Under the pieces are notes generated by a model. That model was not told the DNA's origin, did no database searches, and saw only the letters and a program-made list of their open reading frames with translations. DNA of 64,000 bases from Tubulanus polymorphus. Taxonomy: Eukaryota > Animalia > Nemertea. Of this stretch, positions 48,468-56,158 are shown piece by piece. Location: contig NC_134031.1 of NCBI RefSeq assembly GCF_964204645.1, forward strand, positions 3,968,001-4,032,000, written 5' to 3'. Made by a program: the position numbers and the translations under genes. Numbering within the stretch: position 1 is the first letter of the stretch; every line of letters starts with the position of its first letter.

Positions 48468-51159
48468 ATGATTATTACCATATTGTTGAGCATTCTTCTT
48501 CCCTCCGTATCAGGACATGGTATGTCACAATTTTACATATTATTACGATTTTACGAACATTGGCTTTTGTGTGATTATAGATTGGATATCAAAAATACCC
48601 TCTTTCAATGATAGGATACATGCCGTATGGATGGGGATGGAATCCGATGATGCGACAGCAGCCGATGACAAAAGTTGAACAATGTATGATAAGAAAAAAA
48701 GCGAGGATAAGTGACAAGCTAATTTCTAGATTTTCATTAAGAAATGCATGGATATGGATAATTACTGATTAACTTTTCAGGTTTAGTGTACGAACGGCCT
48801 TGTAGACTCAGCACCGGACAGTGGTTCAGCGAAGGCGATACCTGTTTCTTTGTGGGTGAAGATGCTAAAAAATCCGACGAAGCCGCGAGTGCATGTAAAG
48901 CTCAGACTATTGATGCCCATTTAGCTATCATAAACAACCCTTTACAAAATAGGGCAATAGCCGGTGAGTTTAGAATTAATGATATTGCAATATAAGTAAA
49001 CAATATTATATACCGGTAACCTATCTGCACATAGAAAAATCCTTAGAATGTGTCTATATTCTCTAATCGTTTTCTTAATAGCTGCTCTGAGGGCGTTCGG
49101 TATTGAATCGGCGATATTCGGATATCATTACCAGGAAAAGGATCAGATATACGCTTATGGTGTAAGCTTACGTTGATTTATGATATTTCCCAATTCCGCT
49201 TTCATCTATATGTAATCCATACCTTAGATAATGTGATTTGCTATAATGTTGTCAATAACCATAAAGAAAGTTTATCGTTATACTTATTTATTCATCAGGA
49301 AAATGACTTTACGAACTGGTACGACCAGGGAGAACCTTCTAACGGTAAGTACCATACATAACGAAGTAGAACCAATTCTTCATATGTTGTCAAAATCGTG
49401 ATGCATTCTTATTAATTCTAGGGAATGATGAGGGATGTGTGATTATGTCTTACCCTCTCCCATTCTTCTGGTGGGATCGAAGCTGCACTGATACCCATCC
49501 TTTTATATGCGAAAGACCCGGTAAGTCGGATGACGAACATCGCGGATAACGTGCACGTTATTCAGTGTGTGCGGACAACCCCGCTCTTACATTGTTAAAT
49601 GCGAAAATGGCGCGGTAAGGCGCAATATGTGGCGTCTTGGCCGCGGATGAAATTAGTGACCACACTCATCCCATCGAGGTAGATAATGATTCTGGGGGGT
49701 ACGTAGTGTGATCACGCAATGGTAAAGGGATGTTTCATTTACTGTTCGTATAAGAATGTTATGTATTCAAGAAATGTGCGGATAGCGGTTACTTATAAAT
49801 GATTCAGTCTCGAGGCCTAAGACGAAAACACTATGTTTTCTTGTGTGTGAATATTCTGTTTTTCTTTCACGAGAAAACAGAATATTCTATGTTTGATTTT
49901 GTAATTGATGTTGATGAAATAGAATAACAGGACAGGGTTTAGAAATTAGTAATAATCAGATTACTGAATATAACGGAATGTTTGTCTATTTCAGCCACAC
50001 TCACGGATCCTAAAGGTAATCATGTATTTGAAAATCATTGATATTTTTGTTGAATGAAGGGTACACACACGTATTGCAAAAATGAAATGAAAATGGGCAA
50101 AAGGATTACGGTTGTATGTTTATGATTTCATTAGTCGTTACATATATCGTAGAGAGGGCTTGGATATCTTCGATACGATTTAGAAAGTATCTCTTCCGTA
50201 AGATGATGGTTGATAGATAAGTCTATCGCGTCGGTCATATGTGATTACATCAAAACTAAATCGTTTATTCCATTTAACTATTAGTGACATGCGATGGGTG
50301 GCGAAGATATGGTAATAAGATGTTCAAGCAATTCACCGAAAAAGTTGTACGACAAGTTGCAGCGGATAAATGTAAAGCAATCAACGGAAAATTAGCAGAA
50401 ATACGTAGTTGGGACGAGCAAAGATTTGTCGGAGGTAAGTTCCGTCGGTGAGGTAATTTGAGATAAAATGATAATACAATAGCATACTGAAGTTATGACA
50501 ATGTCATAATGAGTCCAAATACAAAAATGTTTATATTTGAAAATCAAAATAGGCACCAGGTTTTTTGTTTTAATCAATACTCGATACTGGTACACCGAGT
50601 TATCGGCTATCTTACTACATGCGAAACCTAATCTAAAATCCATTTACTTCCTATGAGGAAGTAAATTCGGAACATTTCGAATCATCGAACATATTGAAAT
50701 TGTATCTAATTTTTCCATAGAACTTTCGAGGTCATCATCGAAATCTTACATCGGTTTTCATCGAATTGACTTCGATACTTCACCAACCTTTATCTGGAAC
50801 GTAAGTATTCAATAGATTATTCTTCTGATATATACAAAAAGTCGGATCACGGGACCGTTATATTAGTCCGAGTTGTCGTATCTCCGGAACGTATTTCTGG
50901 AACGGTATAGTTTTCAATGGATTTTTTCTTCTGATACAAAAATGGAAAATTATGAATACGTTCACAATGTCATTTATTGATTGATGTGTTTCATTTGAAG
51001 GATGGTGATGTCTTTACGAACTGGGGTCCGGGAGGTGAGGTTGCCCCAGCAGTGGCAGCTGCGGAGAAATACTGCACCGCTATTAACAATGATGGCAGCT
51101 GGAAAGTGGTAGAATGCGCTCAGACCGCTCATCCATTTATCTGCTCGAAGAAAAACTAA
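48468..51159 (+). CDS. Secreted C-type lectin with two CTLDs, copy 3
   Basis: Same exon structure as copy 1; open frame in the exons checked; CTLD1 motifs EPS and WWD. Confidence 0.85.
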
Positions 51160-52215: not shown

Positions 52216-55200
52216 ATGGCGAGATTAGTAAACTACGCGAGGCGAGTCGTCCAGAATTTTGTCGATCGAGCGCCGCCACTAATTAATAAAGTCGGCAGAG
52301 GAGGCCAGCAAAATTTTCGTCATGAATTTCAACACTCACGACCCGTTGCCCAGCCGACGAAATTTTCGCACGTGTATCAGAAATTTGCACGAAAATCGAT
52401 GGCATCCGAGCTACGCCGCAAGTATGTTCCCGCCGGGCTCGCCGGTTCAATTTTCAGAGCCGGATTACGCCCAATAACGGCTTTCGGATTCGTTGGAGTT
52501 GCATTGGCTGGAACTGATACTGGTTGGCACAGACGCACAACCGAACAGGAAGATATCTGTAATATCATACAGGTACGTATTACAAAACTTGATAGAAAAT
52601 TTTCAAAGAATAAAATGATCCAAGTTTAACATTTCCATGGCATCTATCATGTATCGCGGTGTTTAATCCACCCATCCTATTGCCCCAACCCCACAATGGG
52701 TTTCATCCATGTAAAGTTAATTATAGATTCAGTTAAAATCCCTGCTTAAGATGACAGGACCTGTTTAGATATCGATCTAACGATACACTGTACTGTGAGG
52801 TAGATGCAATATGGTAGTGCATCCATCATACATTGCACTGTGGTGTAATTTTCAAATTTTTATGGCAATATCAGGTCGGACTGAAAGGGTTACGCTAAAA
52901 ATGCTGAGGTACTGGAAAGCACTCTTATGCTGTGATTTTTAAAATTCTACATTTCCAGGACATTTTCAAGCGTCACGATTCTTCTTTGGAAACTGAATCG
53001 CAATTATCTGACGGAGCACGGCCCGCGAAAGTTGAGGACTTCGATTTCGGCAACATCATCGGTAAAGGTTGTAACGCAGTCGTTCACGAGGCAAAGCTCA
53101 ACAGGACACTCGATGAGTCGGATGAAGATGGCGTTCTCGATCTACCGCCAGTTGAGTTCAGCGTAGAAGAAGATATCGCAGAAAACGAAGATAGCTTCGT
53201 TGTCTTAGATGATGGTTTTCTGGTTGACGGGCGTGATAGCGAGGACAGCTTTATCGTACTGGATGATAGCGACGATCTACCAGAGAAAGATGATGTAAAA
53301 CCTAAAACTTCTGATGATGAAAATGGATTTTTGGATGACGATTGCGATGACAGCTTTATAATACTGAATGATACTAGTAATGATAGTATTGTTCCAACGG
53401 AGTTGTCTTCGAATGAATCGACGAATCATTCATTCTACGGCGATGAAGGGCAATTATCAGGTAGGACACTGACCTGATTCAAAAAGCTTGCTGAAAAATG
53501 GTTCCTCATTTAGATGATAAGTAGCTTTTGGCAAAACGGTCTGTTTTCCAGATAAAAAAGAAGCACCAGATTTTCGTCCTTCGGGAAATTTCGATCTAGC
53601 TGTGAAGATTATTTTCAACTACGAGGCCGAATCATGTTGGAATGATATCGTGGCCAGTTTCGAGAAAGAGGCCCTTCCGGTTCGCGCTATTGATTCGAGA
53701 CTGGAAGAAATGTGGCACAACAGGTGAGGATAAGTCATTATTCGAAACATGATCATGATCATCTGAAGATATACTTCAGGCCAGGGGTGGATTTAAGAGG
53801 AAGGTGCACACCCCAACTTGTCAAGTTATTTTATGGGAAAATGAAAAATATTTCACTGATAACTACAGGTTAAATCCATTTTCTCGTTCTCTGTATTTCC
53901 AAAAATGTTTTCCGATGAGCTTTCTTTGAATTAGACCCTGGATCCGCCCCTGCACTTCACATGAATGTTTCTAACTAATCAGTGCGTATTTGATATACAT
54001 TTTTACAGGCATCGGTGTAAAATGAAACGTTTACCGCCACATCCGAATATCGTTGCCATGCCGATGATGTTCGTCGACGACGTGCCTCTTTTGAACGGAG
54101 CCGAATCGGAATATCCGCTTGCGTTGCCTGTAAAACTTAATCCGGACGGATACGGCAGAAATCAGACTATGTTTCTCGTCATGAAAAAGTATGTACAGAT
54201 TGTTAGTCAAGACATAATAGACATGGTATGGGTTGCCTCGAGAATATTCTAATCACATTATTTAGAGCCTTTATTATCCCTACTGTTTGGCGTTGATTAT
54301 ATAAACTTTGTTTACATAATCAACCGATTCAAAATGCCTGTTGTGTTAACTTTGTTTCTGGTTATTATGTGTAATGGATTTGTCTAGGAAATATGCCGGG
54401 AAACGACGAAGTATGATTTTGAATTGTAGGTACGATTACACATTGCGGGAGTATCTAGCCAATCATGATTTGGATTATGAACAATCAACATTTCTATTCG
54501 CTCAGCTGCTTGAAGGGCTACTTCACCTGCACAAACACCGGGTGGCGCATCGAGACCTCAAAAGTAATAATGTTCTGATTCACCGTCAGAAAGGTTTGTT
54601 TTTCGAAATTTCATTGAAAGAAATATGGAACTAAGATAGTTGCTAAGGTTAATACTTTACGGTTTTCATGGACTTGTTTTGTAGACGAAGCTGAGTTAGT
54701 TATCTGTGATTTTGGTAGTTGTTTATCGGAAGGTCGGTTGAAGATACCATACAATTCTTCGGAAGTTAGTAAAGGTGGAAATGCAGCACTTATGGCTCCC
54801 GAGGTAGGTTAACATGGTGACTACTCTCTTTCGACTTGGATCTTTACCAGAGAAATTTGATAGCAGCTTATATGAAAGAGAATATCGGGTACCAAACTTT
54901 TTAGATTTAATACCCCAAAACTGTTTTGTTAATCAATTAGTAGAGCTGAAGGGAGGGCTTCCTGGTATTTGTTTCATTAGAATAGTGACATCGCATGTAC
55001 TCACATGGTTGACTTTTTCATTTTTGGATCCATGTACCGGTATCTCCTTGGATGAAATCAATGTATTTCTATGCAGTCCCTCTGTAGTTATGTCTATGGA
55101 TTATGCTGTAGATTGCCAAAGCAGAGCCTGGACCGAAGTCTTTTCTCGACTATGACAAAGCTGATGTTTGGGCGGCTGGAACATTGGCGTACGAGATTTA

Positions 55201-56158
55201 CGGCTTACCAAACCCGATCTACCGTAAACTGTCTAATAAAACATGCAAGACAACCGACCTGCCAGATTTACCAGGTAGACCAACATTGCCATGAATGATG
55301 AATTCTCTTATGAGGTCTATACTCGTTACTGAAAATATGTTTTCATGGATTTAAGATACAGTTCCGGAAATTGTGAAAAAAGTGATAAACCTTATGCTAC
55401 AGCCAGAACCAGAACAGGTTCGTAGAATGGAACAACTTGAGATATTTTCTAAAACTCAGTTTACAGCATAAGACTACCCGATGTACCAACAGTAGTCTCT
55501 CAACTTCCCATGAAAAATCCCTGCTAAATAGGCTACATTAAACTCTCATTGAATGAAGCCAGTTACGATTTACATCAATAGGCTACAATATTTTGTATTC
55601 CATACTATAAATGGACTTCAAAATGTCAAGGTTATGACATAGTTCACCATTGGTATTAATTCAGTATCAATCTACAGCTCTGCCTGGACCCAGACCTCTC
55701 AGACATGCAATACATCGTTCCAATTATATTTTGGCAAGGCTTCAGCACTTCACATTACCTCAGATATTTTTGATTGAAAATGAACGTACTACTACGTAAT
55801 TTTATCACCACACTTACAAACAGTGATTGCCAGGCTGCAGATTTGATACCTCTGTTACAGGTTTTAAATAGCTTGCATTTGATTTCAGCGTGTTTCACCC
55901 CTGCAAGCTGTGAACATGTTACAAATCATTTTATGGGGACCGGACTCATGGCGAAAACCCGGAGCCGAACCACCGACCCGTACTGAAATTTTAAGCTGGT
56001 TAATGATCCTCGCGGCGGACGCTATCATGTCGAGGTTACGTTCATCTGGTTGTATCGTGAAGAACTCAGTCGGTTATCAACTCAAACAGCTCTTCCTGAT
56101 GAGAGCAGATATCGTAGATATCACAGAGGCTGTTTACCTTTTACAAGACGAGGATTGA
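52216..56158 (+). CDS. PINK1: Mitochondrial Ser/Thr kinase PINK1
   Basis: Arg-rich presequence; TM segment [10 protein letters not shown]; IGKGCNAVV; LAVKIIFNY; [35 protein letters not shown]; HRDLKSNN; DFG; [10 protein letters not shown]; KADVWAAG; C-terminal extension. Confidence 0.96.
53782..53952. mobile_element. MITE in PINK1 intron
   Basis: TIRs CAGGGGTGGATTTA / TGGATCCGCCCCTG; a related terminus CAGGGGCGGATCCAG occurs at ~11904. Confidence 0.65.

What the first reader, a model, noticed from the sequence alone, without database searches (positions are those of the whole stretch)
53098..53590. PINK1 with a giant acidic kinase insertion carrying three tandem optineurin-like LIR motifs: a possible self-contained mitophagy receptor
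Seen: between the Gly-rich loop ([13 protein letters not shown]) and the LAVK lysine there are ~134 mostly acidic residues. They include three repeats, EDSFVVLDD (53187), EDSFIVLDD (53241) and DDSFIILND (53346). Known: this position is PINK1 'insertion 1', only a few tens of residues in human. The LIR consensus is acidic-[WFY]xx[LIV]. The optineurin LIR is EDSFVEI, with the Ser before Phe phosphorylated by TBK1 to boost LC3 and FIP200-claw binding. In the canonical pathway PINK1 needs ubiquitin/Parkin and receptors such as OPTN/NDP52 to reach ATG8. Inference: this PINK1 may display multivalent, phospho-tunable ATG8/FIP200-binding motifs on the cytosolic face of damaged mitochondria, fusing sensor and receptor. 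The motif cores are retained while codons and spacers differ, which hints at selection on the motif.
Basis: partly seen in the sequence, partly recalled or inferred. Interest (0 to 1): 0.85.

Follow-up and report, generated by a model that had tools for sequence, protein, structure and literature searches.

The report
PINK1 loop carries autophagy docking motifs
In this ribbon worm, and in most molluscs and segmented worms sampled, the mitochondrial damage sensor PINK1 has a long floppy loop with repeated short motifs like those that recruit the cell's self-eating machinery, so it may call that machinery directly; insect PINK1 lacks them, and binding is untested.

Summary
The window holds PINK1 of the nemertean Tubulanus polymorphus (RefSeq XP_074654817.1, 662 aa). 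Insertion 1 is 136 aa, 32% D/E, predicted disordered, and kept whole in a spliced contig from another study. The three [DE]DSF[VI][VI]L motifs are at the stated places.

The feature is not unique to this worm. 56 of 61 lophotrochozoan PINK1s carry 1-5 copies of [DES][DES][IF]x[VI][LIVM] in an otherwise drifting acidic loop. A hemichordate and two probable millipedes also have it; insects, amphioxus and Elysia do not.

Across orthologues the first hydrophobic position is Ile 62%, Phe 28%, and almost never Trp or Tyr. That fits the FIP200-claw motif (FIR; CCPG1, ATG16L1, optineurin types) better than a plain LIR; such motifs often bind ATG8 too. Best reading (0.58): damage-stabilised PINK1 displays multivalent FIR/LIR motifs that recruit FIP200 and ATG8. 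A SUMO-binding role is the main rival.

'Self-contained' is not supported: Parkin, NDP52/TAX1BP1-type genes and a TBK1-type gene remain in the genome. No binding was tested. I found no paper describing these motifs, and no earlier scan note on PINK1 in this genome.

The parts
52216..52572 (+). PINK1 exon 1, coding part: mitochondrial presequence, transmembrane segment, start of N-terminal extension
   Evidence: start ATG matches P0001
52959..53460 (+). PINK1 exon 2: end of N-terminal extension, Gly-rich loop and most of insertion 1
53058..53084 (+). Gly-rich loop IGKGCNAVV (P0001 153-161)
53097..53595 (+). Insertion 1, 136 aa, acidic, predicted disordered; interrupted by intron 53461-53551
   Evidence: pLDDT under 50 over residues 178-289
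53142..53165 (+). Second conserved motif LPPVEFSV ([AP]PxxF-x-V), partner unknown
   Evidence: 23 hits in 20 of 57 orthologues against 1.3 expected
53187..53213 (+). FIR/LIR-type motif 1, EDSFVVLDD (P0001 from residue 196)
53241..53267 (+). FIR/LIR-type motif 2, EDSFIVLDD (P0001 from residue 214)
53346..53372 (+). FIR/LIR-type motif 3, DDSFIILND (P0001 from residue 249)
53552..53723 (+). PINK1 exon 3: end of insertion 1, catalytic lysine (LAVK, 53596-53607), conserved Ser314 at the autophosphorylation position
   Evidence: equivalence of Ser314 to human Ser228 from own knowledge
54009..54188 (+). PINK1 exon 4, including insertion 3 (the ubiquitin-binding loop in studied orthologues)
   Evidence: single copy in the genome
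54430..54593 (+). PINK1 exon 5 (HRDLK catalytic loop)
54685..54803 (+). PINK1 exon 6 (DFG, activation segment)
55112..55274 (+). PINK1 exon 7
55356..55417 (+). PINK1 exon 8
55889..56158 (+). PINK1 exon 9, coding part, C-terminal extension and stop

Best explanation
Insertion 1 of lophotrochozoan PINK1 is a disordered acidic tether carrying one to five FIP200-claw-binding (FIR) motifs, many of which should also bind ATG8 proteins. Tubulanus has three of the Ser-Phe, phosphorylation-dependent (optineurin, mode II) type. SHOWN: the loop is coding and spliced in, predicted disordered, and its motifs are kept by selection and multiplied by internal duplication. KNOWN: PINK1 is imported and destroyed in healthy mitochondria and builds up on the TOM complex of damaged ones with its kinase facing the cytosol. 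INFERRED: the motifs are therefore displayed only on damaged mitochondria. There, once the Ser before Phe is phosphorylated (TBK1 or another kinase), the motifs of clustered PINK1 bind the dimeric FIP200 claw with avidity, start an autophagosome locally, and may then hand over to ATG8 on the growing membrane. This would work beside, not instead of, the phospho-ubiquitin/Parkin/receptor route.
For: Published FIR consensus [DEST][DEST][FWYILV]xx[ILV] (PMC7615515): 191 hits in 57 lophotrochozoan loops against 78.7+-8.0 in shuffles (maximum 104). The bare aromatic LIR core is not enriched (ratio 1.0-1.6). Anchoring on the hydrophobic core alone (144 cores): position -1 is D/E/S in 94% (background 42%), -2 in 85%; first residue Ile 62%, Phe 28%, Val 4%, Leu 3%, Trp and Tyr under 1% each. 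Ile pairs with Asp/Glu at -1 (76/88) and Phe more often with Ser/Thr (22/40), the two FIR modes of PMC7946963. The commonest triplet SDI (53 cases) is that of CCPG1 SDIVTL, and a Gigantopelta motif DDIEVI equals the ATG16L1 FIR core, which binds both FIP200 and ATG8s (PMC12513996). The strict Val/Ile at +2 is what LC3-subfamily binding needs. Motif identity 0.55-0.88 against 0.22-0.65 for spacers in seven groups. 0 of 17 control acidic stretches of this genome carry the derived motif. The genome's FIP200 claw keeps the pocket strand (one Lys to Arg) and several ATG8 loci exist.
Against: No binding data; complex prediction could not be run. Ile-type motifs also fit the antiparallel SIM pattern, and the Tubulanus cores fit a parallel SIM. 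Insects, amphioxus, Lingula and Elysia lack the motif, so it is dispensable in some lineages. [quoted passage not shown] The orthologues are related and not independent, so the P values are inflated. The 57-sequence set left out four short or motif-free lophotrochozoan loops (counted in the 56/61 figure).
Confidence: 0.58

Rival explanations
1. The motifs are tandem SUMO-interacting motifs that read poly-SUMO on mitochondrial outer-membrane proteins (for instance made by the MUL1/MAPL ligase), helping to position PINK1 or deliver substrates.
For: The SIM pattern [VIL]x[VIL][VIL] is enriched 2.1-3.4-fold in annelid-like, gastropod and bivalve loops. Acidic and Ser flanks and tandem copies are typical of SIMs (PMC12751080). 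A MUL1-type GIDE domain is in the genome.
Against: SUMO's first pocket takes Leu, Ile or Val, yet the orthologues toggle Ile with Phe and rarely use Val or Leu. 20 of 31 Phe motifs have a polar second residue and fit neither SIM orientation well, and 11 sequences have only Phe-type motifs. The antiparallel SIM pattern is not enriched in nemerteans.
Confidence: 0.17
2. The motifs are under selection for another partner or purpose: another strand-addition partner (another ubiquitin-like protein or a kinase adaptor), an intramolecular brake on the kinase, or ATG8-dependent disposal of stray cytosolic PINK1 rather than of mitochondria.
For: Short acidic-hydrophobic motifs are degenerate and shared by several folds. 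A second conserved motif, [AP]PxxF, and a dipteran RVxF-like motif show that the loop is a general docking platform.
Against: The positional pattern matches the FIR consensus in detail. The AlphaFold2 model shows no confident fold for the motifs on the kinase.
Confidence: 0.21
3. The loop is neutral low-complexity sequence and the repeats are leftovers of slippage or duplication.
For: Spacers change quickly: 8 of 8 listed differences outside the motifs between two conspecific sequences are non-synonymous. Length varies about tenfold across lophotrochozoans.
Against: Motifs are kept across nemerteans, annelids, molluscs, rotifers and a hemichordate while spacers cannot be aligned. No DNA tandem repeat remains in the insertion. 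The two listed differences inside motifs are synonymous (Fisher P=0.02, small numbers).
Confidence: 0.04

Closest known systems
PINK1 (human, Tribolium, Pediculus)
   Same: Orthologue with presequence, transmembrane segment, intact kinase motifs, insertion 3 and C-terminal extension.
   Different: Insertion 1 is 136 aa and acidic with three motifs. It is about 12 aa in Tribolium, and about 30 residues were deleted from the human protein as insert 1 without a known role.
Optineurin dual LIR/FIR (DSFVEI), FIR mode II
   Same: Asp-Ser-Phe-Val/Ile-x-hydrophobic with acidic residues upstream; Ser at -1 could be phosphorylated.
   Different: Three copies on a kinase loop rather than one on a ubiquitin-binding receptor; +2 is Val/Ile, not Glu; untested.
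CCPG1 FIR (SDIVTL) and ATG16L1 FIR (DDIEVIV), FIR mode I
   Same: The commonest form in mollusc and annelid PINK1 loops (SDI 53 times, DDI 14 times).
   Different: Not the form found in Tubulanus itself, whose three copies all have Phe.
Outer-membrane mitophagy receptors (FUNDC1 DDDSYEVL, BNIP3/NIX)
   Same: Would work like them: a membrane-anchored protein showing a phospho-regulated motif to the cytosol.
   Different: No sequence homology claimed; exposure would be gated by PINK1 stabilisation rather than by expression or dephosphorylation.
SUMO-interacting motifs (for example RNF111 DSEVEIVTV)
   Same: Acidic flank plus hydrophobic-x-hydrophobic-hydrophobic core, in tandem.
   Different: Phe at the first position and rarity of Val or Leu there.

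Membership tests
PINK1 | [quoted passage not shown] | tested here: met
PINK1 | Catalytic motifs intact (Gly loop, Lys305, HRD, DFG, conserved Ser314) | tested here: met
PINK1 | Ubiquitin Ser65 kinase activity on depolarised mitochondria | not testable with these tools
   needs an assay
Canonical LIR/AIM | [WFY]xx[LIV] core with acidic residues upstream, in a disordered region | tested here: met
   three copies in Tubulanus
Canonical LIR/AIM | Aromatic first residue conserved in orthologues | tested here: not met
   Ile 62%, Phe 28%; 31 of 57 sequences have only aliphatic-type motifs
Canonical LIR/AIM | Binding to the ATG8 LIR docking site | not testable with these tools
   no complex prediction or assay available
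FIR (FIP200 claw-binding motif) | [DEST][DEST][FWYILV]xx[ILV] consensus, strong need for acid or phospho-Ser at -1 | tested here: met
FIR (FIP200 claw-binding motif) | A FIP200 claw with the motif pocket in the same organism | tested here: met
FIR (FIP200 claw-binding motif) | Direct, phosphorylation-enhanced binding to the claw | not testable with these tools
   needs ITC, fluorescence polarisation or pull-down
SIM | Aliphatic core (antiparallel psi-x-psi-psi or parallel psi-psi-x-psi) with acidic flank | tested here: inconclusive
   Ile-type copies fit; Phe plus polar copies do not; Tubulanus cores fit only the parallel form
Selective autophagy receptor | Needed and sufficient to link cargo to the phagophore | not testable with these tools
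   needs cell assays; canonical pathway genes are retained

The most novel reading that the evidence does not exclude
The PINK1 of early bilaterians was both damage sensor and mitophagy receptor: insertion 1 recruits FIP200/ULK1 and ATG8 directly and can start mitophagy without Parkin or ubiquitin-binding receptors. Insects and humans, the models on which the pathway was worked out, lost this shortcut.
Probability: 0.2. Interest if true: 0.88.

Novelty: new variant of a known kind. Interest (0 to 1): 0.68.

Why it matters
PINK1 is a Parkinson's disease gene whose mechanism comes almost entirely from human and insect proteins, where insertion 1 is treated as dispensable. A conserved, copy-number-variable autophagy docking motif in this loop across many animal groups would give the loop a function and a direct link from PINK1 to autophagosome initiation. 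It is testable with short peptides and with a loop swap into PINK1 in receptor-null or Parkin-free cultured cells.

Tried and rejected
Intron retention or mis-annotation: rejected by the spliced contig and by long loops in orthologous transcripts.

Species-specific oddity: rejected.

Recent DNA tandem repeat: none in the insertion.

A folded domain in the loop: none by AlphaFold2, Pfam or the Atlas. A homologue search on residues 120-330 found one weak relative only.

Loss of canonical receptors as the reason for the motifs: not supported. The NEMO-domain search was blank and uninformative, and the UBAN + zinc-finger gene (L010) was not assigned to NEMO or optineurin.

The clade P0020/P0080/P0277-P0280, which has Phe-type motifs, could not be named. 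No cnidarian or echinoderm PINK1 was identified, so the age of the motif is open.

Literature searches found no description of these motifs; the 48-orthologue preprint has no mention of 'acidic', 'LIR' or molluscs. The library is incomplete.

Earlier scan notes were irrelevant.

Exons were searched by reference, and the full-length protein used was the database record P0001. For the length count the two exon pieces were added with X at the split codon.

Full report
Gene and organism. A search with exon 4 found a protein identical over that exon, P0001, named PINK1 of Tubulanus polymorphus, XP_074654817.1, 662 aa. The gene has nine coding exons from 52216 to 56158; their lengths add up to 662 codons plus stop, and all introns are GT..AG. 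It is single copy and keeps the catalytic motifs.

Observation. Between VHEAK and LAVK lie 136 residues, 32% D/E, split by the intron 53461-53551. The three motifs are at 53187, 53241 and 53346. A 2534-nt contig of run X5, from another study, joins the nine exons and keeps exon 2 whole. The kind of that run is not on record, but a spliced contig implies mRNA; contigs cannot exclude rarer isoforms. AlphaFold2 folds the kinase confidently and leaves residues 178-289 below pLDDT 50. For this sequence alone, three bare LIR cores are expected by chance (P=0.28), but three extended xLIR matches are not (P=0.006).

Selection within the species. X5 differs at 15 places in exon 2 against one synonymous change in about 800 bases of the later kinase exons listed. 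Of the 11 listed exon-2 changes, one lies before the loop, eight are non-synonymous and lie in spacers, and two are synonymous and lie in motifs (Fisher P=0.02). This is weak on its own, and four changes were not listed. Copies 1 and 2 differ by five synonymous codons and one non-synonymous.

Orthologues. About 200 full-length PINK1s were collected and their loops cut out. In a quick tree of 144 kinase cores, a 61-row clade (support 94) holds the named nemerteans, annelid, molluscs, brachiopod and rotifer. 56 of its rows carry one to five copies of [DES][DES][IF]x[VI][LIVM]. The exceptions are Elysia and its sister row (21-23 aa loops), Lingula and two unnamed rows. Saccoglossus has a 262-aa loop with four or five copies; the millipede Chamberlinius and its unnamed sister row have one; sharks have a possible remnant, SFVIL. 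Amphioxus, horseshoe crab, centipede and insects have none, apart from one beetle hit that may be chance. Copy number grows by block duplication, as in Sinanodonta and Lineus. The Tubulanus loop is therefore of ordinary size for its group. Unnamed rows are placed by the tree only.

Statistics. With the published FIR consensus, 57 lophotrochozoan loops hold 191 matches against 78.7+-8.0 after shuffling. The aromatic LIR core is not enriched, and long dipteran loops show no FIR enrichment. Motif positions are more conserved than spacers in all seven groups aligned, for example 0.83 against 0.34 in oysters and 0.79 against 0.27 in an annelid-like subclade. None of 17 acidic coding stretches drawn from this genome has the derived motif (a small control). 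The derived pattern is circular and the sequences are related, so effect sizes matter more than P values.

What the motif resembles. Anchored on the hydrophobic core alone, position -1 is D/E/S in 94% of 144 cases, and the first residue is Ile 62%, Phe 28%, with Trp and Tyr under 1% each. Ile and Phe replace each other at the same aligned site in snails and scallops. A canonical LIR wants an aromatic there; the FIP200 claw accepts both and needs the acid or phospho-Ser at -1 (PMC7946963; PMC7615515). Ile goes with Asp at -1 and Phe more often with Ser, the two FIR modes defined for CCPG1 and optineurin. The ATG16L1 FIR core DDIEVI occurs letter for letter in Gigantopelta, and that motif binds both FIP200 and ATG8s (PMC12513996). 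SIMs are the serious rival: Ile-type copies fit the antiparallel SIM, but SUMO's main pocket prefers Leu, Ile or Val (PMC12751080), and 20 of 31 Phe-type copies fit neither orientation well.

Partners in the genome. There is a FIP200 claw whose motif-binding strand matches the human one, several ATG8 loci, Parkin RING0, SKICH-domain genes, a UBAN + zinc-finger gene, a TBK1-type domain and a MUL1-type domain. Oyster is reported to keep OPTN and p62 (PMC9163569). The motifs thus do not replace a lost pathway.

Mechanism. From established knowledge, PINK1 accumulates only on damaged mitochondria, with its kinase facing the cytosol. I infer that the loop then presents several FIR/LIR motifs, switched on by phosphorylation of the Ser before Phe, which bind the dimeric FIP200 claw and later ATG8, adding a direct route to the ubiquitin route. 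Coding status, predicted disorder and selection are shown; partner, phosphorylation and cellular effect are inferred. Confidence 0.58; SUMO 0.17; another partner or purpose 0.21; neutral 0.04.

Novelty. PINK1 and the motif classes are known; I found no report of their combination. A 2026 analysis of 48 orthologues calls insert 1 poorly conserved and without a significant role in cells (10.64898/2026.09.05.749644). Verdict: new variant of a known kind, interest 0.68. The stronger claim, receptor- and Parkin-independent mitophagy by an ancestral PINK1, has probability about 0.2.

Noticed in passing
window 53142-53165; 20 of 57 lophotrochozoan PINK1 loops: A second conserved motif, [AP]PxxF(x[VI]), 23 hits against 1.3 expected. 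It resembles the Homer EVH1 ligand PPxxF (from memory); partner unknown.
   Followed up: partly
Dipteran PINK1 insertion 1 and two unnamed arthropod rows (for example P0214, P0292, P0111, P0123): These long, less acidic loops carry an RVxF-like PP1 docking motif instead: 48 hits in 34 of 46 sequences against 5.5 expected. It may mean phosphatase docking on mosquito and midge PINK1.
   Followed up: partly
P0227, P0228, P0249, P0060 and relatives (caenogastropods): Further conserved blocks in the loop: GWV[LF]Y[RK] between the two motifs and EPAPN near the end.
   Followed up: no
P0043 (catshark PINK1): 255-aa insertion 1 made largely of a 10-residue tandem repeat.
   Followed up: no
P0073: Partial PINK1 with about six near-identical SDIEVIE copies in a row, an extreme of motif multiplication.
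   Followed up: no
L002 (G000:C7:20092216-20096250): Tubulanus FIP200 (RB1CC1) appears to lie in one open frame of 1397 aa, unusually intron-poor.
   Followed up: no
L006-L008 (G000:C8:10590264-10596833): Three tandem SKICH-domain matches in open frames of 418-455 aa, a possible local expansion of NDP52/TAX1BP1-like genes.
   Followed up: no
window 50977-51159: A weak C-type lectin domain match just upstream of PINK1 on the same strand.
   Followed up: no
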